A DNA stretch of 28,664 nt, from contig NIVC01002008.1 in NCBI GenBank assembly GCA_002269645.1, positions 1 to 28,664 of the forward strand, written 5' to 3'. Below, one piece after another: positions 7,268 through 28,664 of the stretch; positions within the stretch are counted from its first letter, which is position 1; each line of letters begins with the position of its first letter. Source of the stretch: Macrostomum lignano (taxonomy: Eukaryota). The translations under genes and the position numbers were made by a program. Under the pieces are notes generated by a model. It was not told the DNA's origin. It saw only the letters and a list, made by a program, of their open reading frames with translations, and ran no database searches.

Positions 7268-7768
<501 letters not shown>

Positions 7769-7846
7769 TAAAAAGGACAACTTTGTACTTACAATGCTTG
7801 ATTAATGCTCCAAAGCAAGTTACTAGTAGTGAAAATTATGAAATAG

Positions 7847-8110
<264 letters not shown>

Positions 8111-8149
8111 TGAAGATTTTTTTAATAAAAACACAATTTCAAACTAGCT

Positions 8150-8565
8150 ATGAACACCAGTTCACACTAACTTTAAACACCAGTTTACACGAACTTTAAA
8201 CACCAGTTCACACTAACTTTAAACACCAGTTTACACGAAATATAAACACCAGTTTACGCTAACTATAAATATTCACCAGTTCACACTAATTATAAATGTT
8301 CACCAGTTCACACTAATTATAAATGTTCACCAGTTCACACTAACTATAAATATTCACCAGTTCACACTAATTATAAATATTCACCAGTTCATATTAACTA
8401 TAAATATTCACCAGTTCACACTAACTATAAATATTCACCAGTTCATATTAACTATAAATATTCACCAGTTCACACTAACTATAAATATTCACCAGTTCAT
8501 ATTAACTAAAAATATTCACCAGTTCACACTAATTATAAATATTCACCAGTTCATATTAACTATTA
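8150..8565. repeat. 25-27-bp minisatellite in GAPDH intron 2 (TTCACCAGTTCACACTAACTATAAATA), about 16 copies
   Basis: Direct reading. Confidence 0.95.
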
Positions 8566-8725
8566 ACACGATTTCGAAGACTAAAGCCACGAATTCACAA
8601 TTGCAGCTCTTTTAGCGCTGTGAAATATCAAGTTAATATTAATGTCCTATGCATGCATTTTATCATCTATATTTTAAAGTGGCCTTCGGTTTTTGATAAA
8701 ATTTTTAATTATTAATTTCAATTAA

Positions 8726-9097
<372 letters not shown>

Positions 9098-9954: not shown

Positions 9955-10450
9955 TCGTGCACATCTACTCTCACCTAGATTTCCCGCTCACGTCTATTCT
10001 CACCTAGATTTCCCGCTCACGTCTATTCTCACCTAGATTTCCCGCTCACGTCTATTCTCACCTAGATTTCCCGCTCACGTCTATTCTCACCTAGATTTCC
10101 CGCTCACGTCTATTCTCACCTAGATTTCCCGCTCACGTCTATTCTCAGCTAGATTTCCCGCTCACGTCTATTCTCACCTAGATTTTCTGCTCACATCTAT
10201 TCTCACCTAGATTTCCTGCTCACATCTATTCTCACCTAGATTTCCTGCTCACATCTAGTCTCACCTAAATTTCCTGTTCACATCTAGTCTCACCTAGATT
10301 TCCTGCTCACATCTATTCGCACATAGACTGGCTGCTCGCTTCTAATCTAACCTAGATTTCCTGCTCACATTCTCACCTGCACTGTCTCATCTCATCCAGA
10401 CGGGCTGCTCATTTTCTAATCTCACCCAGACCGGCTGCTCATCTCTTATC
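9955..10450. repeat. 29-bp minisatellite (TCTATTCTCACCTAGATTTCCCGCTCACG), about 14 good copies, then degenerate
   Basis: Direct reading; lies immediately upstream of the KDM1B-like acceptor. Confidence 0.93.
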
Positions 10451-10453
10451 TAG

Positions 10454-11149
10454 GATCGCAGCCCACTGTTTCTAAGAAACACAGACCAAATATCTGTCTT
10501 CTGAAACGCAAACGCGAACCCGATAGCTCTGACTTCGTCGGCAGCCGCGGTGCTCTCGAAGGCTGCACAAAATCTGGTTGCGGCGAGTCTCAACCGGTCT
10601 GTTTCGCCCGCCTATCGTCTCGTTGCGTCGCTATAGCAACAGAATCTAATTCTAAAACGTCGCGTTGGTACCACCTGAGCAGGTGGGAGCACTATTGCAA
10701 CGCCTGTTTTGAGCTGTGCTATCGAGGCCGGTTATCCAACGAATGGGCACCTAGTTGGGTTGCTCAGCTCAGATCGGCCTGGTTGCGTGCGGAGTGCCGC
10801 CAGCCCAGCCCCAGGGAACTGCTGGCTAACGCCGCACTGCCCTACTGGGCCTCTTGTCGAGACTGCGGCCGGTGGAGACAATTGGACACTGGCTCGGATT
10901 GTAATAGCGATAACTATTATAACTTGTTGCCAAGGCGTTTGTTAGAGTTTCGATGCAGTAATTGCGACGAACCCGAACACCCGGGCGTGGCTTGGGCCGC
11001 GTCGGATCCTGATTTCCTGTCCAGCCTGGCTGCTCCTGTGCTGCTGCAGGACAACTGCTGTAGAAGGCTGCTGCTGTTCGACTCCAAGTTGAACGGCTGC
11101 AGGCCTTTAAGCGTTGGTCTGGCGCCTCTGCCCGGTGATCAGCTGATTG
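10454..11149 (+). CDS. KDM1B: KDM1B/LSD2-like exon: C4H2C2 zinc finger and zf-CW (5' boundary uncertain, 10454 or 10462)
   Basis: The frame is open from 10420 and reads CTKSGCGESQPVCF...SRWYHLSRWEHYCNACFELCYR...PSPRELLANAALPYWASCRDCGRWRQL...CDEPE...APVLLQD. This parallels LSD2 CEKAGC..PVCF..SRWYHLSCGEHFCNECF..QLPYWVQC...KWRQL. Donor g|gtaggg at 11150, phase 1. Confidence 0.88.
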
Positions 11150-11379
11150 GTAGGGCTTAGCGGTAAAATGCGTCCCCTGGTTCGATTCCTGGCCAAATTC
11201 ATTTTGGAGCTTGTCAGGGCCGCTGCACACTCTTTGAGCGTGTGCATGAGTGCGTGCTTGCATACAGTATTGGCGAGTTTGTATGTGCTCAGTAGTCAGC
11301 GGAATGGGCAACATTGCTTCACAGCGCCAGTGGTGGGACGGTGTCGCCGAAGGCGTTTTCCAACAGCCCTCCTACTTCG

Positions 11380-11810
11380 GGAGGCAGATGTAGGGATCGA
11401 GAGGCGGATGTAGGGATCGGGAGGCGGATGTAGGGATCGAGAGGCGGATGTAGGGATCGGGAGGCGGATGTAGGGATCGGGAGGCGGATGTAGGGATCGG
11501 GAGGCGGATGTAGGGATCGAGAGGCGGATGTAGGGATCGGGAGGCGGATGTAGGGATTGAGAGGCGGATGTAGGGATCGGGAGGCGGATGTAGGGATCGG
11601 GAGGCGGATTTAGGAATAGAGGTAGATTTAGGAATGGGGAGGTAGATGTAGGGATGGTGAGGTAGTTGTAGGGATGGTGAGATAGATGTAGGGATGGTGA
11701 GGTAGATGTAGGGATGGTGAGGTTGATGTAGGGAAGGTGAGGTAGATGTAGGGATGGTGAGGTAGATGTAGGGATGGGAGGTAGATGTAGGGATGGGAGA
11801 TTTAAGGGAG
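11380..11810. repeat. 20-bp purine-rich minisatellite with two subtypes (GATGTAGGGATCGGGAGGCG, then GATGTAGGGATGGTGAGGTA)
   Basis: Direct reading; KDM1B-like intron. Confidence 0.95.
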
Positions 11811-11920
11811 GCTGGAAGATAGAGGAAGTGGATGAGGAGGCCCAGACTCTAAACCTCATCAGCGGTGTCCGAGTTCAGTCCACAACCAGATCGCTTCTTC
11901 CCCTCCCCGCCGCCCTTTAG

Positions 11921-14265
11921 ACTCGCCGTCCCAGCTCCACCCGTTCGCCAGCGGCCTGTTCTCTTTCGGCCAGTCCTCGGCCGCTTCTTCGAGTTGCTCG
12001 GCTTTGTCGGTCCGGCCCGACCAGGTCGATCCCGACGAACTGGCCGCCGCCTACCCAGCTGGCCAGTTGGAGCTGCGCAACCAGCCGCAGCTGTACCTGG
12101 CAGTGCGCAATACTCTGCTAGCCGCCTGGGCCATCTGGCACTCGACGCTGGCTCAATCATCGTCTCAGACACCAGCCGATTGGCCAACTATTGCTGGCAG
12201 TCGACGCTCCGAATCGTTAATCCTATGTAGAGGCCTGGCCAGGATTCGAATCTGTTCGGCCATTTTGCCGGCTATTATTCGTCGATTAGAACGTCAGGGC
12301 CTTATTAATTTCGGCATCCGACCTGTCGCTTCCGATGCTGCTGACGGCGACGACGGCGATTGCGACGACGGTAGTGTCACTGATGTCGTTATTGTCGGCG
12401 ACGACATTGCGGGACTGGTGGCGGCTCGGCAGCTGGTCAGCTTTGGCCGGCGCGTCGTTCTGATTGAATCGACCAACAACAACGAAAGGGATAACGACAA
12501 AGGAAATAGTCGTCGGCGACTTCGTCTACCCGACATTGCTGTCGTTGATAGCGTGTCGAATAACCCGCTGTGTCTAATGGCGCTGCAGCGGGGCATCGGC
12601 CACAGCGGTGTTCGTAGTCTGGAGGATAATCCGTTGCTGAACGTGGACCTGTTCGACTGGCCCGACGGCGGTCGGATCGCGGCGGAGTCCGACGTGGTCT
12701 GTCAAGCTGTCGACGTCGTTACTGAGGCACTCGCCGCGGCGTCCGCTAAGCGAGTCTACGCGTCAGCTAGGCGAAAGGCTCGGACAACCGGAAGTGAAGC
12801 TGTTAGCTTCTTTGTCGAATCCGATGCTGCAAATTATGATGCAACCGGAAGTAAATCTATTCCTGCCGGGAATGAACCCAATCCTACCGGAAGTGAAGCC
12901 AATCCTACCGGAAGTGAAGCCAATCCTACCGGAAGTGAAGCCAATCCTACCGGAAGTGAAGCCAATCCTACCGTAAGTGAAGCCAATCCTACCGGAAGTG
13001 AAGCCCATCCTACCGGAAGTGAAGCCAATCCTACCGGAAGTGAAGCAAATCCTACCGGAAGTGAACCCAATTCTACCGGAAGTAAATCAAATCCCACTGG
13101 AAAGAAATCCAATCTTACCAAAAATAGCTCGAATCCAACCGGATTTGTGTCGGCACCAATCGAAAGTGATGACGTATCAGTTTCGACGCAAATCGACGAG
13201 CAGAGTCTGTTAGACGAGATGACCGCCAGTTCGGAGCAAGGCGCCAGATTGTTAAATTTCTACCTGGCCAGTTTAGAGTACAGATTAGGCGCCCCACTCG
13301 ATCTAGTATCCGCCGCCTCGACGTTGCCGTTCGAGCGCGACAAAATTCTGCCGCAACTAAGCGACAATTCAGCGATTGTCGGAGTCGACACTCTGGCCGA
13401 CCTGGCCGACTGGCTGGCTGCCGGCTCGCGGACGGTTCCGCTGCTGCGCGGTTCCGCCGTCGCCCGGATCTGTCGACGTCCGGCGGCCTCCTCGACTTCG
13501 CCAGACACCGGTGTCGAAGTGTCGCTAACCGACGGGCGTCGGATCCGCGCCGCCTGCTGTCTGTTGACGCTGCCGCTAGCGCCGTCGGGTCTTCTGACCG
13601 GTGACGATAATGACGGTCCGGAGTTCGAGCCGCCGCTGCCCAGTTCTAAACTGCGAGCGGCCGACGCTCACGGCTGCTGCCGTTTGTCGACGCTGAGGCT
13701 TCGATTCCGACGTCGATTCTGGCTGCCGAGTCGATGTTTTGCCGCTCTGCCGGAGTCGTCGACAAGTCGCGGCATCTGCCACCTGTTCGTCGATCCGTCC
13801 CCGGTCGATGGCGACAATTCGCCATCAACGTCGTCGGCCTTTCCGCTGTTGGCGATCTTCTGCGGCAAGGCTGTTGAACATCTGGCAGCTCAGGCTGATC
13901 CGCTCGGCTACGCCACCAGAGAGGCCACTCGTCGACTCGCCGTAATATTCGGCGAATCTGCCGAACCGCCCGTCGATTCGTCGCTGAGCAGCTGGTCCGC
14001 CGCCTACCCGGCCGCTGGTCGATGGTCGCCTACTGGCGACGCCGAATTCGCCGACGCACTTTCAGCCGACGTCGGCTGCTCTAGCGGCGGCGACGGCGAC
14101 GGCGATGCCGGCCCGTTGTTCTTCGCCGGCGAAGCCGCGTCGAAGGAGTTTCCGCACAGCCTGACTGGCGCCTGCGTCAGCGGACTGGCCGCTGCTGGCC
14201 GGGTGGCCGACTGGCTGGACGCTCGGTCTAGGCGGGTGCTGCTTCGGGCTGAGCAGCGTTGCTAG
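11921..14265 (+). CDS. KDM1B: KDM1B/LSD2-like large exon: SWIRM and amine oxidase domain
   Basis: Pyrimidine-rich ccctttag| acceptor at 11920, in phase 1 matching the previous donor. ALSVRPD..DEL, LYLAVRNTLLAAW, GLINFG, VVIVGDDIAGLVAARQL, NNPLCLM, LLNFYLASLEY, FEPPLP, LFFAGEAASKEFPHSLTGACVSG all map onto LSD2 segments. Confidence 0.9.
12880..13153 (+). repeat. 21-bp coding minisatellite (AATCCTACCGGAAGTGAAGCC) encoding NPTGSEA, 9 near-perfect and 4 degenerate units
   Basis: In frame within the KDM1B-like ORF, with no stops. Confidence 0.93.
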
Positions 14266-14329
14266 GGCGTCTGGGTGTCTGGACATTGTCTTATCTAGCT
14301 GTTTTCTTATTTACATTCGGTTGCTGGGG

Positions 14330-14790
14330 TGTGTATTTCTGGTTGCAAGGATGTGTATTTCTGGTTGCTAGGGTGGTTATTTCTGGTTGCAAGGATATGT
14401 ATTTCTGGTTGCTAGGGTGATTCTTTCTTAGTTGCTATGGTGATTCTTTCTTGGTTGCTAGGGTGATTCTTTTTTAGTTGCTAGGGTGATTCTTTGGTTG
14501 CTAGGGTGATTCTTTAGTTGCTAAGGTGAATCTTTAGTTGCTAGGGCGCTTCTTTAGTTGCTAGGGTGATTCTTCTTCAGTTGCTAGAGTGATTCTTCTT
14601 TAGTTGCTAAGATAAATCTTTTTTAGTTGCTAGGGCGCTTCTTTAGTTGCTAGTGTGATTCTTCTTTAGTTGCTAGTGTGATTCTTCTTTAGTTGCTAGT
14701 GTGATTCTTCTTTAGTTGCTAGTGTGATTCTTCTTTAGTTGCTAGTGTGATTCTTCTTTAGTTGCTAGGGGGATTCTTTTTAGTTGCTAA
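14330..14790. repeat. Variable 20-26-bp minisatellite (TGATTCTTCTTTAGTTGCTAGTG) 3' of the KDM1B-like stop
   Basis: Direct reading. AATAAA at 15075-15080 suggests it may lie in the 3' UTR. Confidence 0.9.
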
Positions 14791-15349
14791 GCGCATTCGA
14801 TCTGCTAAGGTCGATCAGGTTGCTACTGTCATAAGTTTTAATCACTAAAATGCTTCTTTGTGGTACCTAGAATGTTTTTGGTTGCTGGGATGCTTTCGTC
14901 TCGTCTTTACTAATGACTCTGGTCTGTTTCTCTCTGTGTTTATTGCGATAGCTATTTTCATTTTATAGACACTTGCTACGAGCGTACTGTAAATTTAATC
15001 ATACCCTCATCGTGTTTTCTTGTTGTTCTGTGTTCCTTTTGCATTTTTCCTATTACATCATCTTTTGTAAGCAGAATAAAAATAATTTCGGTTATCCATT
15101 TGACTACTGGAAGTAGAATAAATCCATTTGACTTTCTTTTCACTAAACCCTTAAGTCACTCGATGGCTCATTTTTCTGTTCTGGCAGCACACACTATATT
15201 TGCGCATTTCTACTTACAGTAGCTGCTAAGCGTTTTTATTATTTTTGTAATAAACTCAATTCGTGTAGTTTATCTGACCAAAGCCTCTCTTATATAATTC
15301 AAAAAAAGATTTAAAAATTGTTTTGTCTGTCATTTTTTACCTCTACTCC

Positions 15350-16725
15350 CAGATCAGCCTCCCAGATCCTCAGTTGCTGGGCCAGCCAGCCTCCCAGATC
15401 CTCAGTTGCTGGGTCAGCCTCCCACAGTGTCAGTTGCTGGGCCAGCCTCCCAGATCCTCAGTTGCTGGGTCAGCCTCCCACAGTGTCAGTTGCAGGGCCA
15501 GCCTCCCACAGTGTCAGTTGCAGGGCCAGCCTCCCACAGTGTCAGTTGCTGGGCCAGCCTCCCAGAGTGTCAGTTGCTGGGTCAGCCTCCCAGATTCTCA
15601 GTTGCTGGGCCAGCCTCCCACAGTGTCAGTTGCTGGGCCAGCCTCCCACAGTGTCAGTTGCTGGGCCAGCCTCCCACAGTGTCAGTTGCTTGGGCCAGCC
15701 TCCCACAGTGTCAGTTGCTGGGCCAGCCTCCCACAGTGTCAGTTGCTGGGCCAGCCTCCCACAGTGTCAGTTGCTGGGCCAGCCTCCCACAGTGTCAGTT
15801 GCTGGGCCAGCCTCCCACAGTGTCAGTTGCTGGGCCAGCCTCCCACAGTGTCAGTTGCTGGGCCAGCCTCCCACAGTGTCAGTTGCTGGGCCAGCCTCCC
15901 ACAGTGTCAGTTGCTGGGCCAGCCTCCCACAGTGTCAGTTGCTGGGCCAGCCTCCCACAGTGTCAGTTGCTGGGCCAGCCTCCCACAGTGTCAGTTGCTT
16001 AGGCCAGCCTCCCACAGTGTCAGTTGCTTAGGCCAGCCTCCCAGATCCTCAGTTGCTGGGCCAGCCTCCCACAGTGTCAGTTGCTGGGCCAGCCTCCCAC
16101 AGTGTCAGTTGCTGGGCCAGCCTCCCACAGTGTCAGTTGCTGGGCCAGCCTCCCACAGTGTCAGTTGCTTAGGCCAGCCTCCCACAGTGTCAGTTGCTTG
16201 GGCCAGCCTCCCACAGTGTCAGTTGCTGGGCCAGCCTCCCACAGTGTCAGTTGCTGGGCCAGCCTCCCACAGTGTCAGTTGCTTGGGCCAGCCTCCCACA
16301 GTGTCAGTTGCTGGGCCAGCCTCCCACAGTGTCAGTTGCTGGGCCAGCCTCCCACAGTGTCAGTTGCTGGGTCAGCCTCCCAGATCCTCAGTTGCTGGGC
16401 CAGCCTCCCACAGTGTCAGTTGCTGGGCCAGCCTCCCACAGTGTCAGTTGCTGGGCCAGCCTCCCACAGTGTCAGTTGCTGGGCCAGCCTCCCACAGTGT
16501 CAGTTGCTGGGCCAGCCTCCCACAGTGTCAGTTGCTGGGCCAGCCTCCCACAGTGTCAGTTGCTGGGCCAGCCTCCCACAGTGTCAGTTGCTTAGGCCAG
16601 CCTCCCACAGTGTCAGTTGCTTGGGCCAGCCTCCCACAGTGTCAGTTGCTTAGGCCAGCCTCCCACAGTGTCAGTTGCTTGGGCCAGCCTCCCACAGTGT
16701 CAGTTGCTTAGGCCAGCCTCCCAGA
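15350..16725. repeat. 28-29-bp minisatellite (GGGCCAGCCTCCCACAGTGTCAGTTGCT), about 49 copies
   Basis: Direct reading; explains five repetitive ORFs. Confidence 0.97.
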
Positions 16726-17554
16726 TCTTAGGCCCGTTGCTCGAAAAAATGGTCTTTTGAAAAGTTCCGTCAAAATGGCATTTTTGTTTAAAAAAAGGAG
16801 AAACCTTTCGCCTGCACAGAAACTTGATGGCAACAGAGTTGGAACGAATATAGTCGGCAATCCAAAAAGAAACGATGAGCCAGTTGCATATTGCAGCCAG
16901 CCACTAGCTTCGCTATACTTGCTTGGAGTAGATAATTATACAGGTGGGCATTCAGGGATCCACTCCGCTATGATATTGTTCTTCGCCCCGGGGTTCCGGG
17001 GGTTCGTGCTAAATTTCTAATTCTCTCTCATCTTTTATCTTTTTATAGCGCCCCACCCTATCATCGGCGCAGATTATGGTCTAAGTCTAATACTCATCTG
17101 TATAGCTTTATGAATTATTAATTATTGCTGGAAATGTAAAAAACCGGCATCTCTGAATTGTATTGTGTTGTATATTGTATATGCTTGCGGCTGAGTAGGC
17201 GCCTCAGATCTCATCCCATACACCACTCTGTAGCCAACCTTTGTGCGCTCTCTGATTGGCTGGCTGTAGTTGTTGCCATTGGAGATTGTTGTAGCATTAG
17301 TAGGGAAGAAAAAATGATGATGAGGAAAAGCCGACTCGGTTGGGTATTAAAATAGGAAGCGGTTTGAGTCCAGTCGCAGTGCCGGTTCTGTCGCTGTTAC
17401 GAAAGCTATAAATCATTGCTAGAGTCCTCTCTCGACCAGCTTTGCTAGTGAAATTCTTGTTGATCTCGATTAATCTGATAATATTTTTGGCGCGCAAATG
17501 AAGTGTGAGTATTGTCTTTGATTGCAGGATTTAATTTGACTGGATGCACTGGTA

Positions 17555-18473
17555 CCCCAACCATAAAGTGACGCACTGCACCCCTACCTTAGAGTGACGC
17601 ACTGGCACCCCTACCTTAGAGTGACGCACAGGCACCCCTACCTTAGAGTGACGCACAGGCACCCCTACCTTAGAGTGACGCACAGGCACCCCTACCTTAG
17701 AGTGACGCACAGGCACCCCTACCTTAGAGTGACGCACTGGCACCCATGCCTTAGAGTGACGCACTGGCACCCCTACCTTAGAGTGACGCACAGGCACCCC
17801 TACCTTAGAGTGACGCACAGGCACCCCTACCTTAGAGTGACGCACAGGCACCCCTACCTTAGAGTGACGCACAGGCACCCCTACCTTAGAGTGACGCACA
17901 GGCACCCCTACCTTAGAGTGACGCACTGGCACCCCTACCTTAGAGTGACGCACAGGCACCCCTACCTTAGAGTGACGCACAGGCACCCCTACCTTAGAGT
18001 GACGCACAGGCACCCCTACCGTAGAGTGACGCACAGGCACCCCTACCTTAGAGTGACGCACAGGCACCCCTACCTTAGAGTGACGCACTGGCACCCATGC
18101 CTTAGAGTGACGCACTGGCACCCCTACCTTGAGTGACGCACAGGCACCCCTACCTTAGAGTGACGCACAGGCACCCTACCTTAGAGTGACGCACAGGCAC
18201 CCCTACCTTAGAGTGACGCACAGGCACCCCTACCGTAGAGTGACGCACAGGCACCCCTACCTTAGAGTGACGCACAGGCACCCCTACCTTAGAGTGACGC
18301 ACTGGCACCCATGCCTTAGAGTGACGCACTGGCACCCCTACCTTGAGTGACGCACAGGCACCCCTACCTTAGAGTGACGCACAGGCACCCCTACCTTAGA
18401 GTGACGCACAGGCACCCCTACCTTAGAGTGACGCACAGGCACCCCTACCTTAGAGTGACGCACTGGCACCCCT
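17555..18473. repeat. 27-bp minisatellite (TTAGAGTGACGCACAGGCACCCCTACC), about 34 copies
   Basis: Direct reading. Confidence 0.97.
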
Positions 18474-19039
18474 AACTTTTTGGGAGTGATATCCAGAAAC
18501 TCGAACTTCAATTAAATAAAGTAGACTACAATTTTACTGCGAAGTTATACATTTTATTGATGTTTCTTCAGTCAATAACATTTTTCCAATCTCTCGAATT
18601 AGCTAGATTCAGATTCAGATTTCAATAAAAAAAAATGTTTTATTGTTACAGGATAATCAATAGTCAGATGTTTCAGCTCCACAATGGCGCAGGAAAACTT
18701 TGCTAATGAGAAAATGCCCTTTGAAGTACCGCATAGCGTAACGTATTGGCTTTTCTTTTGCTTTTTTATTTCTTTACATGCAGCTCAGGCTATGGCGCAC
18801 TTCCCACACTCACTATATGAGCGTTGAATTATTTATGCCAACCAAGAGGAGAGTCACTGTGTCGGATCTCTGCAGTTTCCCTGTGTGTTATCTATGTATC
18901 TTATTACACTATAGATCGCGTATAGTTTTTTTGGGTGATTCTGGTGACGTACAGCTAGTTATTGAGTTATGGTGCTAGTGGTCAGGCATATCGATAGACA
19001 ACTGCAGTAGTAGAGGGACTCTGAATAAAAGTAGATTTT

Positions 19040-19490: not shown

Positions 19491-19909
19491 AGCAGCATCT
19501 GTCTGTGTCTGTCTGTCTGTGGCCCTAACCCCGGGGTTTTCGGGGCTGAATAAATTTTTAGTGAATGGTTCTGTGACATATCTAGGTAATATAGTATCTC
19601 TAGCGAGCGTACAGAATGCACTAACTATACAACAGATATGCATTTGGTCATGGGTCAGGCTTAGCTCGCTCTCGCTATCTTTATGCAAAGCAGGGGTTTT
19701 CTATCAGTTCCACATTGCGGACAAACCGGTTTATCGTGTTATAAAAATATCATTAAAAATTTAAAACTCACAAAAAGCATCAATCGATTTTTACGAGCAT
19801 TGGCAATTAATTATACTTCTATATTACAGTCATGACCTCATTGATTTTCTTAGAACTTCTCATCGTCTCAGAAAAAACGAAGAAAAAAATTGACATTGCC
19901 AGCTAGAGA

Positions 19910-20235
19910 CAGCCAATGACAACTAGTGACAGCCAATGACAGCTAGTGACAGCCAATGACAGCTAGTGACAGCCAATGACAGCTAGTGACAGCCAATGAC
20001 AGCTAGTGACAGCCAATGACAGCTAGTGACAGCCAATGACAGCTAGAGACAGCCAATGACAGCTAGTGACAGCCAATGACAGCTAGTGACAGCCAATCGC
20101 AGCTAGTGACAGCCAATCGCAGCTAGTGACAGCCAATGACAGCTAGTGACAGACAATGACAGCTAGTGACAGACAATGACAGCTAGTGACAGCTAATGAC
20201 AGCTAGAGACAGACAATGACAGCTAGTGACAGCTA
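19910..20235. repeat. 20-bp minisatellite made of two related 10-mers (GACAGCTAGT-GACAGCCAAT), about 16 copies
   Basis: Direct reading. Confidence 0.95.
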
Positions 20236-20768: not shown

Positions 20769-20871
20769 GTACAGTGCTTGTTTACACTGAAGTTTTCGTT
20801 TTCGATTGAGCAGTATCCTCATACCTACAACAGTCGAATTCCCATATCTACAGTATAAAGTAAAGTAGAAT

Positions 20872-21515
20872 ACCTCTCATACCGACAGTAGAATTCCCCT
20901 CATACCGACAGTAGAATTCCCCTCACACCGACAGTAGAATTCCCCTCACCCCGACAGTAGAACTCCCTCACCCCGACAGTAGAATTCCCCTCACACCGAC
21001 AGTAGAACTCCCCTCATATCGACAGTAGAACTCCCCTCATATCGACAGTAGAATTCCCCTCACACCGACAGTAGAACTCCCCTCACCCCGACAGTAGAAT
21101 TCCCCTCACCCCGACAGTAGAATTCCCCTCACACCGACAGTAGAACTCCCCTCATATCGACAGTAGAATTCCCCTCACACCGACAGTAGAATTCCCCTCA
21201 CACCGACAGTAGAATTCCCCTCACACCGACAGTAGAACTCCCCTCACACCGACAGTAGAATTCCCCTCACACCGACAGTAGAATTCCCCTCACCCTGACA
21301 GTAGAATTCCCCTCACACCGACAGTATAATTCCCCTCACCCGACAGTAGAACTCCCCTCATATCGACAGTAGAACTCCCCTCATATCTACAGTAGAATTC
21401 CCCTCACACCGACAGTAGAACTCCCCTCACACCGACAGTAGAACTCCCCTCACACCGACAGTAGAATTCGCCTCGCACCGACAGTAGAATTCCCCTCACA
21501 CCGACAGTAGAATTC
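20872..21515. repeat. 23-bp minisatellite (CCGACAGTAGAATTCCCCTCACA), about 28 copies
   Basis: Direct reading. Confidence 0.96.
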
Positions 21516-23854: not shown

Positions 23855-23901
23855 GTGCCTGTCTGTCTGTCTGTCTGTCTGCCTGCCTGTCTGTCTGCCT
23901 A

Positions 23902-23940
<39 letters not shown>

Positions 23941-23995
23941 GCCTGTCTGCCTGTTCGTCTGTCTGTCTGTCTGCCCGCCTGTCTGTCTGCCCGCC

Positions 23996-24042
<47 letters not shown>

Positions 24043-24259
24043 GTGTCTTAGTGTCTGTCTGTCGGTCTGTCTGTTTGCTTGTCTGTTGCATACGAGCCAA
24101 TATCCGATATGCAGCGAAAACAACTTAGAAACAAATTATACTGATTGCCAATCGAACTAATATTTTGGCTTTGAAAGACTAACTGCAAAACTCTATAATA
24201 AATACAGTCTACATCCTACATACTGTCTGTCTGTCTGTCTGTCTGCCTGTCTGTCTGCC

Positions 24260-24296
<37 letters not shown>

Positions 24297-24351
24297 GCCT
24301 GTCTGTCTGCCTGTCTGCCTGTCTGTCTGTCTGTCTGTCTGTCTGTCTGCC

Positions 24352-24388
<37 letters not shown>

Positions 24389-24413
24389 GCCTGCCTGCCT
24401 GTCTGTCTGCCTA

Positions 24414-24464
<51 letters not shown>

Positions 24465-24491
24465 GCCTGTCTGTCTGCCTGTCTGTCTGCC

Positions 24492-24536
<45 letters not shown>

Positions 24537-24615
24537 GCCTGTCTGCCTGTTCGTCTGTCTGTCTGTCTGCCTGCCTGTCTGTCTGTCTGTCTGCCCGCCT
24601 GTCTGTCTGCCCGCC

Positions 24616-24672
<57 letters not shown>

Positions 24673-24699
24673 GCCTGTCTGTCTGCCTGTCTGTCTGCC

Positions 24700-24736
<37 letters not shown>

Positions 24737-24815
24737 GCCTGTCTGCCTGTTCGTCTGTCTGTCTGTCTGCCTGCCTGTCTGTCTGTCTGTCTGCCCGCCT
24801 GTCTGTCTGCCCGCC

Positions 24816-24862
<47 letters not shown>

Positions 24863-24905
24863 GTGTCTTAGTGTCTGTCTGTCGGTCTGTCTGTTTGCTT
24901 GTCTG
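23855..24905. repeat. Interrupted (GTCT)n/(GCCT) microsatellite, two blocks separated by a duplicated unique segment
   Basis: Starts directly after the LDLa exon donor; source of the QTDR/LSVC pseudo-ORFs. Confidence 0.96.
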
Positions 24906-25364
24906 TTGCATACGAGCCAATATCCGATATGCAGCGAAAACAACTTAGAAACAAATTATACTGATTGCCAATCGAACTAATATTTTGGCTTTGAAAGACT
25001 AACTGCAAAACTCTATAATAAATACAGTCTACATCATGCCTCAAGTAAGCTAGATTTTTCAGTAGAACAAGTTTTTGGCAAGCTCAGAATTTGCTACTCA
25101 ATTCTAAAGATTTTTTTCCATTTTTCACGAGGTAGCTCGAAAGGTTCAAATGGGAAAAAGGGCAGAAGGTAGAGAGGCAGGGAGCAGTGAATGCAAGATG
25201 AACTGTAGCACTCCAACTAGTCTGCCCAGTAATTGAATTAAAATAAATTGCGTTTATTGGCTTGGCACCTGTCAAATTGTCTCCCAAATTTGAATCAAAG
25301 CATTTTCAATATTTTAGGCGTCAATACTAAATTCATTTTGTCACATTTCCTACATCTCACTTCC

Positions 25365-25770
25365 GCTCCGCCTCTCACCCTTCCTCTCCGCCTCTCTCCC
25401 TTCCTCTCCGCCTCTCTCCCTTCCTCTGTGCCTCTCTCCCTTCCTCTGTGCCTCTCTCCCTTCCTCTCCGCCTCTCTCCCTTCCTCTCCGCCTCTCTCCC
25501 TTCCTCTCCGCCTCTCTCCCTTCCTCTCTGCCTCTCTCCTTTCCTCTCCGCCTCTCTCCCTTCCTCTCCGCCTCTCTCCTTTCCTCTCTGCCTCTCTCCC
25601 TTCCTCTCTGCCTCTCTCCCTTCCTCTCCGCCTCTCTCCCTTCCTCTCCGCCTCTCTGTGTCCTCTCTGTCTCTCTCTCTATTCCTCTCCGCCTCTCTGT
25701 GTCCTCTCTGTCTCTCTCTCTTGCTCTCCGCCTCTATCCCTTCCTCTCTGCCTCTCTGCCTTTATCTCTC
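25365..25770. repeat. 20-bp polypyrimidine repeat (CCTTCCTCTCCGCCTCTCTC)
   Basis: Direct reading. Confidence 0.93.
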
Positions 25771-25931
25771 CTCTTATTTCTTATATAATAAGAACTTATT
25801 TCTAATAGGTGCCTCGTATTGCGTCTCAAATTCCTTTTTGCTTTTTTTATGGTCCTTCCACGGCAAGGTGTATCGATTGCAGTTAAAGGTGCAGAGGGAC
25901 AGCCATTGCTATTCCAGTTATAGGAAATTGA

Positions 25932-26518
25932 TGCCACAACTCACAGGGTGAGATGCCACAGCTCACAGCGTGAAATGCCACAGCTCACAGGGTGAGATGC
26001 CACAGCTCACAGGGTAAGATGCCACAGCTCACAGGGTGAGATGCCACAGCTCACAGGGTGAGATGCCACAGCTCACAGGGTGAGATGCCACAGCTCACAG
26101 GGTGAGATGCCACAGCTCACAGGGTGAGATGCCACAGCTCACAGGGTGAGATGCCACAGCTCACAGGGTGAGATGCCACAGCTCACAGGGTGAGATGCCA
26201 CAGCTCACAGGGTGAGATGCCACAGCTCACAGGGTGAGATTCCACAGCTCACAGGGTGAGATGCCACAGCTCACAGGGTGAGATGCCACAGCTCACAGGG
26301 TGAGATGCCACAGCTCACAGGGTGAGATGCCACAGCTCACAGGGTGAGATGCCACAGCTCACAGGGTGAGATGCCACAGCTCACAGGGTGAGATGCCACA
26401 GCTCACAGGGTGAGATGCCACAGCTCACAGGGTGAGATGCCACAGCTCACAGGGTGAGATGCCACAGCTCACAGGGTGAGATGCCACAGCTCACAGGGTG
26501 AGATGCCACAGCTCACAA
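25932..26518. repeat. 22-bp minisatellite (GATGCCACAGCTCACAGGGTGA), about 26 copies
   Basis: Near-identical copies. Confidence 0.97.
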
Positions 26519-28292: not shown

Positions 28293-28341
<49 letters not shown>

Positions 28342-28356
28342 GCCTGCCTGTCTGTT

Positions 28357-28387
<31 letters not shown>

Positions 28388-28485
28388 TGCCTCCCCCTGC
28401 CTGTCTGTTTGTCTGTCTGTCTGCCTGCTGTCTGTCTGTCTGTCTGCCTGTCTGTCTGCCGTCCTGTCTGTGTCTGTCTGTCTGC

Positions 28486-28520
<35 letters not shown>

Positions 28521-28619
28521 CTGTCTGCCTTCCTGCCTGCCTGTCTGTCTGTCTGTCTGCCTGTCTGTCTGTCTGTCTCCTGTCTGCTCTGCCTGTCTGT
28601 CTCTGTCTGTCTGCCTGTC

Positions 28620-28655
<36 letters not shown>

Positions 28656-28664
28656 GCTGCCTGT
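28292..28664. repeat. (GTCT)n microsatellite running off the window end
   Basis: Direct reading. Confidence 0.96.

What the first reader, a model, noticed from the sequence alone, without database searches (positions are those of the whole stretch)
12385..14265. KDM1B/LSD2 homologue that looks like a pseudo-enzyme: readers intact, FAD and catalytic motifs lost
Seen: an uninterrupted ORF with well-preserved zinc-finger, zf-CW and SWIRM motifs. The dinucleotide-binding GxGxxG is GDDIAG (12397-12414), the LEAKDRIGGR and GRGAQ segments are replaced by unrelated polar sequence, and the position of LSD2 GIIEKIALQF..RFW reads CRLSTLRLRF..RFW (Lys to Thr at 13690-13692). The AYS motif is also not recognisable. 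Known: these residues bind FAD and support catalysis in LSD1/LSD2, and LSD2 has demethylase-independent activities. Inference: a catalytically dead chromatin reader or scaffold maintained by selection, since the frame stays open over more than 1000 codons.
Basis: partly seen in the sequence, partly recalled or inferred. Interest (0 to 1): 0.72.

Follow-up and report, generated by a model that had tools for sequence, protein, structure and literature searches.

The report
Catalytically dead LSD2 homologue in flatworm
This flatworm (Macrostomum lignano) gene descends from the histone demethylase LSD2/KDM1B and keeps its zinc-finger and SWIRM modules, but it has lost the residues that hold the FAD cofactor and do the chemistry while still evolving under purifying selection, so it is most likely a natural "dead" demethylase kept for a non-catalytic job.

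Summary
The window is Macrostomum lignano scaffold NIVC01002008.1. Positions 12385-14265 are the amine-oxidase-like part of a two-exon KDM1B/LSD2-family gene: exon 10510-11149, intron 11150-11920, exon 11921-14265, 994 codons.

What has changed against about 35 canonical KDM1A/B sequences:
- GxGxxG reads G-D-D-I-A-G.
- The RxGGR and GAQ segments are replaced.
- The catalytic Lys is Thr (13690-13692).
- AYS reads RWS, and the flavin-cage Tyr is Cys.

What is kept:
- All eight C4H2C2 ligands, the CW Cys/Trp residues and 10 of 10 conserved SWIRM columns.
- The predicted fold, which matches human LSD2 best (Foldseek E about 1e-41).

It is not a sequencing error or a plain pseudogene. Three syntenic copies carry the same changes. 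The gene models are RNA-seq derived. dN/dS between homeologues is 0.27-0.41 (ZF-CW 0.05-0.08, AO-like 0.32-0.48).

Trematode homologues (Paragonimus, Dicrocoelium) are degraded further and share G->D and K->T with this gene (shuffle P=0.018). The inactivation may therefore be ancient in flatworms.

An intact paralogue in M. lignano was neither found nor excluded.

The parts
10510..11149 (+). Exon A of the KDM1B-like gene (residues 1-213 plus the first base of codon 214). The 5' boundary is approximate. There is no in-frame ATG in this exon.
   Evidence: tblastn of GenBank proteins PAA92271/PAA57689/PAA61658 gives 98-100% identity. A GT donor lies at 11150.
10564..10707 (+). N-terminal C4H2C2 zinc finger (C19, C24, C31, C39, H55, H61, C63, C66).
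   Evidence: All eight ligands are invariant in the alignment with fish, snail and priapulid KDM1B. Coordinates are. dN/dS of residues 1-170 is 0.05-0.08.
10837..10980 (+). zf-CW module (W113, C116, C119, W122, C149, C152).
   Evidence: These columns are invariant. Pfam zf-CW scores 17.7 bits, E=0.004, below the cut-off of 27.5.
11150..11920 (+). Intron (GT..AG, 771 nt) that holds a 20-nt minisatellite at 11377-11799.
   Evidence: Sequence. The splice restores '...GDQLI|DSPSQLHP...' exactly as in the GenBank proteins. TRF result.
11921..14265 (+). Exon B: linker, SWIRM and AO-like domain, ending in the TAG stop at 14263-14265. The uninterrupted frame runs 11836-14262.
12013..12315 (+). SWIRM domain (residues 245-345), carrying a lineage-specific insertion of about 14 aa.
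   Evidence: Aligned to the human LSD2 SWIRM (domain 1). All 10 of 10 columns conserved at 80% or more are kept. The model shows helices here. There is no Pfam SWIRM hit.
12385..12435 (+). Degenerate dinucleotide-binding beta-alpha-beta start, VVIVGDDIAGLVAARQL. GxGxxG reads G373-D-D375-I-A-G378, so the second Gly is Asp.
   Evidence: This Gly is 100% conserved in the 35 canonical sequences.
12454..12519 (+). Replacement of the 'LEArdRiGGR' FAD-ribose/pyrophosphate loop by IESTNNNERDNDKGNSRRR. The beta2 Glu is kept.
   Evidence: pLDDT is below 50 in the model.
12529..12567 (+). Replacement of 'GrGAQivnG..NNP' by PDIAVVDSVSNNP.
12841..13140 (+). In-frame 100-aa low-complexity insertion, (PTGSEAN)n. 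It is a 21-nt coding minisatellite (12844-13102) and lies at the site where LSD1 carries its Tower domain.
   Evidence: TRF. Segment lengths are 153-174 aa here, 44-51 aa in canonical KDM1B and 147-168 aa in KDM1A-type sequences. pLDDT is about 30. Copy number differs between the loci.
13318..13371 (+). The segment that aligns to 'S..WDxxExFaQFxGDH' reads STLPFERDKILPQLSDNS.
   Evidence: W->F, D->E, G->D.
13669..13722 (+). HGCCRLSTLRLRFRRRFW. The catalytic Lys position is Thr804 (ACG, 13690-13692).
   Evidence: Lys is present in 94% of canonical sequences. Thr is also present in both trematode homologues.
13987..14028 (+). 'W..DP...MAYS' region, which reads SSWSAAYPAAGRWS.
   Evidence: Confidence is low in the model.
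14116..14184 (+). LFFAGEAASKEFPHSLTGACVSG. The C-terminal FAD motif is largely kept, but the flavin-cage Tyr is Cys965 (14173-14175).
   Evidence: In the near-identical copy L002 the otherwise invariant Gly of FFAGE is Ser.

Best explanation
The region is the amine-oxidase-like (AO-like) domain of a transcribed KDM1B/LSD2-family gene of Macrostomum lignano that has become a pseudo-enzyme.

Shown here:
- It descends from LSD2 and keeps the LSD2 architecture and predicted fold.
- The residues that canonical KDM1 enzymes use to bind FAD (second Gly of GxGxxG, RxGGR, GAQ) are substituted in all three genomic copies.
- The residues used for catalysis (the Lys equivalent to LSD1 K661, the flavin-cage Tyr, AYS) are substituted in the same three copies.
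- The coding sequence evolves under purifying selection. This is strongest on the zinc-finger/CW module and weaker, but still present, on the dead AO-like domain.

Inferred:
- The protein cannot bind FAD or demethylate lysine.
- It acts through its C4H2C2-CW-SWIRM module as a non-catalytic chromatin-associated factor: a scaffold, a repressor or possibly a ubiquitin ligase. Human LSD2 has demethylase-independent activities of this kind.
- The AO-like lobe is retained as the structural platform against which those modules pack.
- Its start codon is probably supplied by the spliced leader.
- The inactivation probably predates the split of Macrostomorpha and trematodes.
For: Homology and fold:
- PDB phmmer: human LSD2 E=6e-26.
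- Pfam Amino_oxidase E=4.5e-25, covering only the C-terminal half of the model.
- AlphaFold pTM 0.75. Foldseek returns 17 LSD2 chains first, at E 1e-41 to 1e-37.

Loss of motifs:
- Alignments.
- Audit of conserved columns: 33 of 88 AO columns changed, against 0 of 10 SWIRM columns.
- Codons verified.

Not an error:
- Three syntenic loci (Pkinase-GAPDH-this gene-LDLa) in GCA_002269645.1 carry the same substitutions.

Selection:
- Window copy against homeologue L001: Sd=44, Nd=35 with the repeat excluded, omega 0.27 (NG86) to 0.41 (YN00), binomial P=1.7e-8.
- ZF-CW omega 0.05-0.08. AO-like omega 0.32-0.48.

Expression:
- The GenBank models of this assembly come only from RNA-seq/transcriptome evidence, with boundaries cut at trans-splice sites (PMC5730564).

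Wider conservation:
- The KDM1B-like proteins of Paragonimus westermani and Dicrocoelium dendriticum have no detectable Pfam amine-oxidase domain. Their GxGxxG reads GPVDVQT/GPLDLCT and their Lys site reads 'RLIT'.
- Four identical derived residues are shared with M. lignano at conserved columns: G->D, N->E, K->T, F->C (shuffle P=0.018).
- The two trematodes are 67-76% identical in ZF-CW/SWIRM and 40% in the AO-like part.

Precedent for non-catalytic LSD2 functions:
- Reviews PMC11241480 and PMC11118440.
Against: - No biochemical test was possible. Loss of FAD binding is inferred from sequence only.
- Several FAD-associated elements persist: the first and third Gly of GxGxxG, the beta2 Glu and FFAGEA..FP..TGA. 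Residual or altered cofactor binding is therefore not excluded.
- Omega of 0.3-0.5 on the AO-like domain is only moderate, and SWIRM+linker has too few changes to test (0.4-0.7).
- Copy-specific expression is unknown. The window copy has CTG where the homeologue has the likely CAG trans-splice acceptor, so this particular copy might be less well expressed.
- Pfam scores for zf-CW and SWIRM are sub-threshold.
- The AlphaFold model was driven by an alignment of canonical enzymes, so its LSD2-like fold is partly imposed.
- The 'reader/scaffold' role is untested.
Confidence: 0.75

Rival explanations
1. Redundant copies drifting towards pseudogenes. After the genome duplication of M. lignano, an intact KDM1B elsewhere in the genome does the enzymatic job, and these copies are in early decay. 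The low dN/dS would then mostly reflect constraint that acted before inactivation.
For: - The genome is a hidden polyploid with much duplicated sequence (PMC5730564).
- Omega on the AO-like and SWIRM parts is relaxed, at 0.3-0.7.
- One copy has lost an otherwise invariant Gly (FFAG->FFAS).
- The window copy lacks the CAG acceptor seen in the homeologue.
- An intact paralogue was not excluded. A probe for S. mansoni Smp_162940 encodes a canonical-looking 'VILRFKYPEHVFWD', which hints that flatworms may keep a second, more canonical LSD2-like gene.
Against: - The inactivating substitutions are shared by all three copies, so they predate the homeologue split (dS about 0.07). Yet since that split there is a significant deficit of non-synonymous changes (P=1.7e-8) and no stop or frameshift in 3 x 994 codons.
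- Trematode homologues with the same G->D and K->T are full-length and conserved between families.
- The S. mansoni LSD2-like genes are expressed across life stages.
Confidence: 0.12
2. It is still an active flavoenzyme, a demethylase or another amine oxidase, that binds FAD through a non-canonical site.
For: The first and third Gly of the motif, the beta2 Glu, FFAGEA and FP..TGA are retained. The AO-like domain is under some purifying selection.
Against: - Asp replaces the second Gly, which is 100% conserved in 35 relatives. By established knowledge of Rossmann folds, that Gly must contact the pyrophosphate.
- RxGGR and GAQ are replaced by polar loops that the model predicts to be disordered.
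- The catalytic Lys, the cage Tyr and AYS are all lost together.
- Pfam detects only the C-terminal half of the amine-oxidase model, and NAD_binding_8 falls below threshold.
Confidence: 0.07
3. Assembly, sequencing or gene-model artefact.
For: The genome is repeat-rich and hard to assemble. The CDS contains a minisatellite whose copy number differs between the annotated proteins and the DNA. The GenBank models are 5'-partial.
Against: - The key codons are identical in three separate scaffolds.
- The splice junction is canonical and reproduces the RNA-derived protein.
- The changes number in the dozens and are not isolated base calls.
Confidence: 0.01

Closest known systems
Human LSD2/KDM1B/AOF1 (PDB 4fwe, 4gu0, 4gut, 7xe1-3)
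   Same: The domain order is the same: C4H2C2 zinc finger, zf-CW, linker, SWIRM, then an amine-oxidase fold without a Tower. All Zn ligands are present. It is the best sequence match (E=6e-26) and the best fold match (E about 1e-41, target TM 0.76-0.79).
   Different: - Only about 24-31% identical.
- The second Gly of GxGxxG is Asp. RxGGR and GAQ are replaced. The catalytic Lys is Thr, the cage Tyr is Cys and AYS is lost.
- It has a 100-aa PTGSEAN repeat and an insertion in SWIRM.
- No FAD binding is expected.
Trematode 'lysine-specific histone demethylase 1B' (Paragonimus westermani KAF8570578.1; Dicrocoelium dendriticum CAH8429180.1), probably the group of S. mansoni 'putative SmLSD2' genes
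   Same: - Flatworm proteins with ZF-CW-SWIRM kept and the AO domain degenerate.
- They share the derived residues G->D in GxGxxG, K->T at the catalytic Lys, N->E and F->C ('GFCHLF').
   Different: - The trematode proteins are degraded further: no Pfam amine-oxidase hit, FFAGEA lost, and 50 of 88 conserved AO columns changed.
- They are only about 25-29% identical to the M. lignano protein.
- Orthology is supported only moderately: NJ bootstrap 47% on the N-terminal part, and 95% on the AO part with a risk of long-branch attraction.
JARID2 and other JmjC-family pseudo-demethylases (established knowledge; reviewed in PMC11241480)
   Same: The concept is the same: a demethylase-family member that has lost its cofactor and catalytic residues but is retained as a chromatin regulator or scaffold.
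   Different: The fold and chemistry are unrelated (Fe/2-oxoglutarate JmjC rather than an FAD amine oxidase). No natural dead member of the KDM1/LSD family turned up in the searched literature.
Rab GDI / REP (established knowledge)
   Same: A flavoprotein-type dinucleotide-binding fold that no longer binds FAD and serves as a protein-binding platform.
   Different: It is a different branch of the fold family, it is cytosolic, and it is not a chromatin protein. The analogy is one of principle only.
Partly degenerate KDM1B in other animals (Argonauta hians GAB1611014.1; hagfish KDM1B; mite Tropilaelaps OQR75056.1)
   Same: Single hallmark residues are lost: Argonauta has IIET and no RxGG, hagfish has GAC and no AYS, and the mite has LEQ.
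   Different: All of them keep an intact GAGxxG and a strong Pfam amine-oxidase score (1e-50 to 1e-62). None shows the combined loss seen here.

Membership tests
KDM1B/LSD2 protein family (by descent and architecture) | N-terminal C4H2C2 zinc finger with eight Cys/His ligands | tested here: met
   C19, C24, C31, C39, H55, H61, C63 and C66 are invariant in the alignment with six canonical KDM1B sequences.
KDM1B/LSD2 protein family (by descent and architecture) | CW-type zinc finger | tested here: met
   W113, C116, C119, W122, C149 and C152 are invariant. Caveat: the Pfam zf-CW score is only 17-18 bits, below the gathering score of 27.5.
KDM1B/LSD2 protein family (by descent and architecture) | SWIRM domain preceding the oxidase domain | tested here: met
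   The region aligns to the human LSD2 SWIRM. All 10 of 10 conserved columns are kept. The model is helical here. Caveat: there is no Pfam SWIRM hit at E<=0.01.
KDM1B/LSD2 protein family (by descent and architecture) | Amine-oxidase fold without the LSD1 Tower; closer to LSD2 than to LSD1 | tested here: met
   PF01593 E=4.5e-25. PDB: LSD2 6e-26 against LSD1 2e-17. Foldseek: LSD2 1e-41 against LSD1 1e-24. A disordered repeat, not a coiled-coil Tower, occupies the Tower site.
Flavin-dependent lysine demethylases (enzyme class KDM1) | Intact dinucleotide-binding GxGxxG | tested here: not met
   The motif reads G-D-D-I-A-G. The second Gly is conserved in 35 of 35 canonical sequences and is Asp here.
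Flavin-dependent lysine demethylases (enzyme class KDM1) | RxGGR and GAQ/GAM FAD-contact loops | tested here: not met
   The columns for G, G and R (91-97% conserved) read E, R and D. The G-A columns read D-I.
Flavin-dependent lysine demethylases (enzyme class KDM1) | Catalytic Lys (LSD1 K661 equivalent) and flavin-cage Tyr (LSD1 Y761 equivalent) | tested here: not met
   Lys->Thr804 and Tyr->Cys965. The roles of these residues are taken from established knowledge of LSD1/LSD2.
Flavin-dependent lysine demethylases (enzyme class KDM1) | FAD binding and H3K4me1/2 demethylation in vitro | not testable with these tools
   This needs recombinant protein.
Pseudo-enzyme (dead homologue retained by selection) | Purifying selection on the coding sequence after loss of the catalytic residues | tested here: met
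   Omega is 0.27-0.41 overall and 0.32-0.48 for the AO-like domain, between copies that both carry the dead motifs.
Pseudo-enzyme (dead homologue retained by selection) | Expression as mRNA/protein | tested here: inconclusive
   The gene models of this assembly derive from RNA-seq (PMC5730564). Copy-specific expression and protein were not checked, and no expression table listing Mlig019979 was found.

The most novel reading that the evidence does not exclude
The inactivation happened once, before Macrostomorpha and Neodermata diverged, so a dead LSD2 has been conserved across rhabditophoran flatworms for hundreds of millions of years. In the strongest form, flatworms have no active LSD2 at all. 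The conserved role of LSD2 in this phylum would then be entirely non-catalytic, and the 'LSD2' genes listed as candidate demethylase drug targets in schistosomes and other flukes would not be enzymes.
Probability: 0.3. Interest if true: 0.72.

Novelty: new variant of a known kind. Interest (0 to 1): 0.58.

Why it matters
LSD2/KDM1B has reported demethylase-independent activities: repression that needs its zinc fingers, and E3 ligase activity (PMC11241480, PMC11118440). These are hard to separate from catalysis in mammals. A natural LSD2 that has lost FAD binding yet remains under selection would help here. M. lignano has RNAi and transgenesis, so it would be a ready-made separation-of-function system for asking what the ZF-CW-SWIRM-AO scaffold does without chemistry.

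It would also extend the pseudo-enzyme concept to the flavin-dependent demethylase family. That concept is well known for JmjC proteins such as JARID2, but I found no described case for the KDM1 family.

Finally, it warns that the genes annotated 'lysine-specific histone demethylase 1B' in flukes, which are listed among epigenetic drug targets (PMC4159997, PMC6288008), may not be inhibitable enzymes.

Tried and rejected
- Two of the three large homology searches were swamped by the PTGSEAN repeat and returned only the gene's own cluster. Only the repeat-free query and the exhaustive phmmer run were useful.
- Search for an intact M. lignano paralogue. I named 20 of the best hits and looked up three more. 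None is from M. lignano. Because the library is clustered at 50% identity, this neither finds nor excludes a paralogue.
- Phylogeny. Grouping of the flatworm sequences has only 47% bootstrap on the N-terminal region. The 95% on the AO region is suspect, because the next neighbours are the other degenerate sequences (long-branch attraction). I treat it as weak support only.
- Literature. There were no papers for KDM1B + pseudoenzyme or for pseudoenzyme + histone demethylase + amine oxidase. Mlig019979 does not appear in any text or supplement searched. The LSD2 structure papers PMC3567815 and PMC3625064 are not held, so the roles of the Lys and Tyr rest on established knowledge.
- The 5' ends of two unnamed transcripts that grouped near M. 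lignano (L004, L005) show no flatworm spliced leader.
- Rejected: a prokaryote-style reading of the ORF list. The long 'ORFs' at 15323-16711 and 17531-18136 are minisatellites, not genes.
Full report
**What the window is.** The window is identical over the whole gene to locus L003, that is NIVC01002008.1 positions 1-28664 of the Macrostomum lignano assembly GCA_002269645.1. M. lignano is a free-living flatworm. The finding lies in a gene whose near-identical GenBank products are 'hypothetical protein BOX15_Mlig019979g1/g2' and 'Mlig012995g1', all 5'-partial.

**Gene model.**
- Exon A is about 10510-11149.
- A 771-nt GT..AG intron (11150-11920) follows. It is filled with a 20-nt minisatellite.
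- Exon B is 11921-14265 and ends in TAG.
- The spliced product is 994 aa.

**Check of the observation.** All the residue-level statements are correct at the stated coordinates.
- GDDIAG is at 12397-12414.
- Thr804 is at 13690-13692.
- A phmmer alignment to human LSD2 (PDB 4gu0, E=6e-26) places VVIVGDDIAGLVAARQL on VIIIGAGPAGLAAARQL, and GCCRLSTLRLRFRRRFW on GAGIIEKIALQFPYRFW.
- MAFFT alignments with 6 and then about 50 KDM1-family sequences give the same registration.

In an audit of columns that are at least 80% conserved in 35 canonical KDM1A/B sequences, 10 of 10 SWIRM columns are kept, but 33 of 88 AO columns are changed. The changed columns include:
- the second Gly of GxGxxG (conserved in 35 of 35; Asp here) and the preceding Ala (Asp here);
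- G-G-R of RxGGR, which reads E-R-D;
- G-A of GAQ, which reads D-I;
- the catalytic Lys, which is Thr;
- the Tyr of AYS, which is Trp;
- the Gly of FxGDH.

In addition, the flavin-cage Tyr of 'TGAYLSG' is Cys965.

The kept elements are the first and third Gly, the Glu that ends beta2, and FFAGEA..FP..TGA.

All eight C4H2C2 ligands and the CW Cys/Trp residues are invariant.

- The zinc fingers are in a separate upstream exon. The uninterrupted frame is 809 codons and the spliced CDS is 994 codons, so it is not '>1000 uninterrupted'.
- Pfam scores for zf-CW and SWIRM are sub-threshold. These modules are therefore preserved at their key residues rather than overall.

**Is it real and is it constrained?** The assembly holds three syntenic copies, in the order protein kinase, GAPDH, this gene, LDL-receptor-A gene.
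- L002 is 99.7-99.9% identical to the window.
- L001 is a homeologue, 94-97.5% identical.
- All three copies carry GDDIAG, RLST and GAC, so base-calling error is excluded.

Between the window copy and L001 there are 49 synonymous and 43 non-synonymous differences (dS 0.069, dN 0.020).
- With the repeat excluded, omega is 0.27 by NG86 (binomial P=1.7e-8 against neutrality) and 0.37-0.41 by YN00/ML.
- The ZF-CW part has omega 0.05-0.08 (11 synonymous, 2 non-synonymous).
- The AO-like domain has omega 0.32-0.48, which is still significantly below 1.
- SWIRM+linker has too few changes to judge.

dS agrees with the roughly 6% divergence of the alignable part of the intron.

The GenBank gene models of this assembly were built only from RNA-seq and transcriptome evidence, with 5' ends cut at trans-splice sites (PMC5730564). 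At least one copy is therefore transcribed.

**Fold.** An AlphaFold2 model built on a 40-sequence alignment has pLDDT 70 and pTM 0.75.
- The low-confidence stretches coincide with the replaced RxGGR loop (400-412), the repeat (513-607), the WD..GDH segment (663-673) and the AYS region (885-897). These residue numbers follow protein P0003.
- Foldseek against the PDB returns 17 human LSD2 chains first (E 1e-41 to 1e-37, target TM 0.76-0.79) and LSD1 only at 1e-24.
- Because the alignment consists of canonical enzymes, the fold is partly imposed by them. It does not argue for FAD binding.

**Relatives.** An exhaustive phmmer search of 1.84 billion representatives finds only 17 proteins below 1e-30. 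The best hit outside the gene's own cluster is a frog KDM1B at 34% identity, so the protein is very divergent.

Among about 50 relatives, essentially all have GAGxxG, RxGG, EK, AYS and GAY. The clear exceptions are the trematode proteins annotated 'lysine-specific histone demethylase 1B': Paragonimus westermani KAF8570578.1 and Dicrocoelium dendriticum CAH8429180.1.
- They keep ZF, CW and SWIRM but have no detectable Pfam amine-oxidase domain.
- Their GxGxxG reads GPVDVQT/GPLDLCT, and their Lys site reads 'ARLITVTL', next to M. lignano 'CRLSTLRL'.
- At conserved AO columns changed in all three lineages, four carry the identical derived residue. In window-protein numbering these are G375D, N482E, K804T and F833C. 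The observed count is 4 against 1.1 expected (shuffle P=0.018). Eight columns match at least one trematode (P=0.0035).
- The two trematodes are 67% identical in ZF-CW, 76% in SWIRM and 40% in the AO-like part. This is the same gradient of constraint as between the M. lignano homeologues.
- Neighbour-joining groups the flatworm sequences with 47% bootstrap on the N-terminal part and 95% on the AO part. Long-branch attraction is a real risk in the latter.

I read this as moderate evidence that the inactivation is old and shared.

The schistosome literature lists two 'putative SmLSD2' genes with ZF, CW and SWIRM and very weak oxidase E-values. It treats them as demethylases and possible drug targets, and both are expressed across life stages (PMC6288008, PMC4159997). 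The microarray probe for one of them (Smp_162940) encodes VILRFKYPEHVFWD, which looks canonical. Flatworms may therefore also keep a more canonical paralogue.

I could neither find nor exclude one in M. lignano. None of 23 identified hits is from that species, but the library is clustered at 50% identity.

**How it most likely works.**

Shown:
- Descent from LSD2.
- Combined loss of the FAD-binding and catalytic residues.
- Purifying selection that is strongest on ZF-CW.
- Transcription.

From established knowledge:
- The second Gly of GxGxxG must approach the dinucleotide pyrophosphate, so an Asp there is sterically and electrostatically incompatible.
- The Lys (LSD1 K661) positions the flavin N5 through a water molecule, and mutating it gives the standard catalytic-dead mutant.
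- The Tyr forms the substrate cage.

Inferred:
- The protein binds no FAD and does not demethylate.
- It acts through the ZF-CW-SWIRM module, with the AO-like lobe as the platform these modules pack on. It would be a non-catalytic chromatin factor.
- Human LSD2 is reported to have zinc-finger-dependent, demethylase-independent repression and an E3 ligase activity (PMC11241480, PMC11118440).
- Which of these functions applies here is unknown.

**Comparison and novelty.** By descent and architecture this is a member of the KDM1B family. By the defining features of the enzyme class (GxGxxG, RxGGR, Lys, Tyr) it fails membership. JmjC pseudo-demethylases such as JARID2, and FAD-fold proteins without FAD such as Rab GDI, are conceptual precedents. 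I found no description of a natural dead KDM1-family member in the searchable literature. I rate it a new variant of a known kind, of moderate-to-good interest, mainly because M. lignano is experimentally tractable.

**Rivals.**
- Early-stage pseudogenisation of redundant copies (0.12). The argument against it is the deficit of non-synonymous change since the dead state arose, together with the trematode counterparts.
- A still-active non-canonical flavoenzyme (0.07).
- An artefact (0.01).

Noticed in passing
window 10400-10530 (and L001 9890-10020): Exon A has no in-frame ATG; the first in-frame Met is at about residue 433. All three GenBank models are 5'-partial and start within 6 nt of each other. 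The M. lignano spliced leader ends in ...TTGCATG (PMC8629364). The homeologue L001 has a perfect trans-splice acceptor, CTTCAG|AAGCGC, 6 nt upstream of its annotated start, and the SL ATG would be in frame there (M-KRKREPD...). The window copy and L002 read CTTCTG at that place (10498-10503), so this acceptor is lost in them. An alternative in-frame AG lies at 10475-10476.
   Followed up: partly
window 12841-13140: The 100-aa (PTGSEAN)n insertion is a 21-nt minisatellite that stays in frame and varies in copy number between the three loci. It sits exactly where LSD1-type proteins carry the Tower domain: the segment is 153-174 aa here, 44-51 aa in canonical KDM1B and 147-168 aa in KDM1A-type sequences. 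It is predicted to be disordered.
   Followed up: partly
L002 (NIVC01002456.1), codon equivalent to window 14128-14130: In the 99.8%-identical copy, the Gly of FFAGEA is Ser (FFASEA). This Gly is invariant in 35 of 35 canonical sequences. It is one of only three non-synonymous differences between the two copies, which fits a lack of constraint on the FAD-contact residues.
   Followed up: no
window 7271-9097 (+): A GAPDH gene (337 aa; last exon 8741-9097, Gp_dh_C E=4e-36) ends 1.4 kb upstream on the same strand. Given trans-splicing in this species, the two genes could be co-transcribed. The order kinase-GAPDH-KDM1B-like-LDLa is conserved in all three loci.
   Followed up: no
whole window, e.g. 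644-1565, 1881-2513, 9960-10368, 11377-11799, 14319-14789, 15355-16723, 17546-18478, 19900-20233, 20864-21515, 25355-25762, 25930-26517: The density of minisatellites with 14-33-nt units is very high (28 TRF rows). There are also long (CTGT)n tracts at 23859-24906 and 28293-28664. Several create long spurious ORFs on both strands, for example 15323-16711 (462 aa) and 17531-18136.
   Followed up: no
proteins P0018 (Argonauta hians), P0040 (hagfish Myxine/Eptatretus), P0038 (Tropilaelaps mite): Other animal KDM1B proteins have lost single hallmark residues while keeping GAGxxG. Argonauta has IIET in place of IEK and no RxGG. Hagfish has GAC, no AYS and an N-terminal THAP domain. The mite has LEQ. 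Partial decay of LSD2 catalysis may be recurrent.
   Followed up: no
window 20690 to at least 24265 (+): The downstream neighbour is a gene annotated with a faint LDL-receptor class A hit. Its model runs through minisatellite and (CTGT)n sequence.
   Followed up: no
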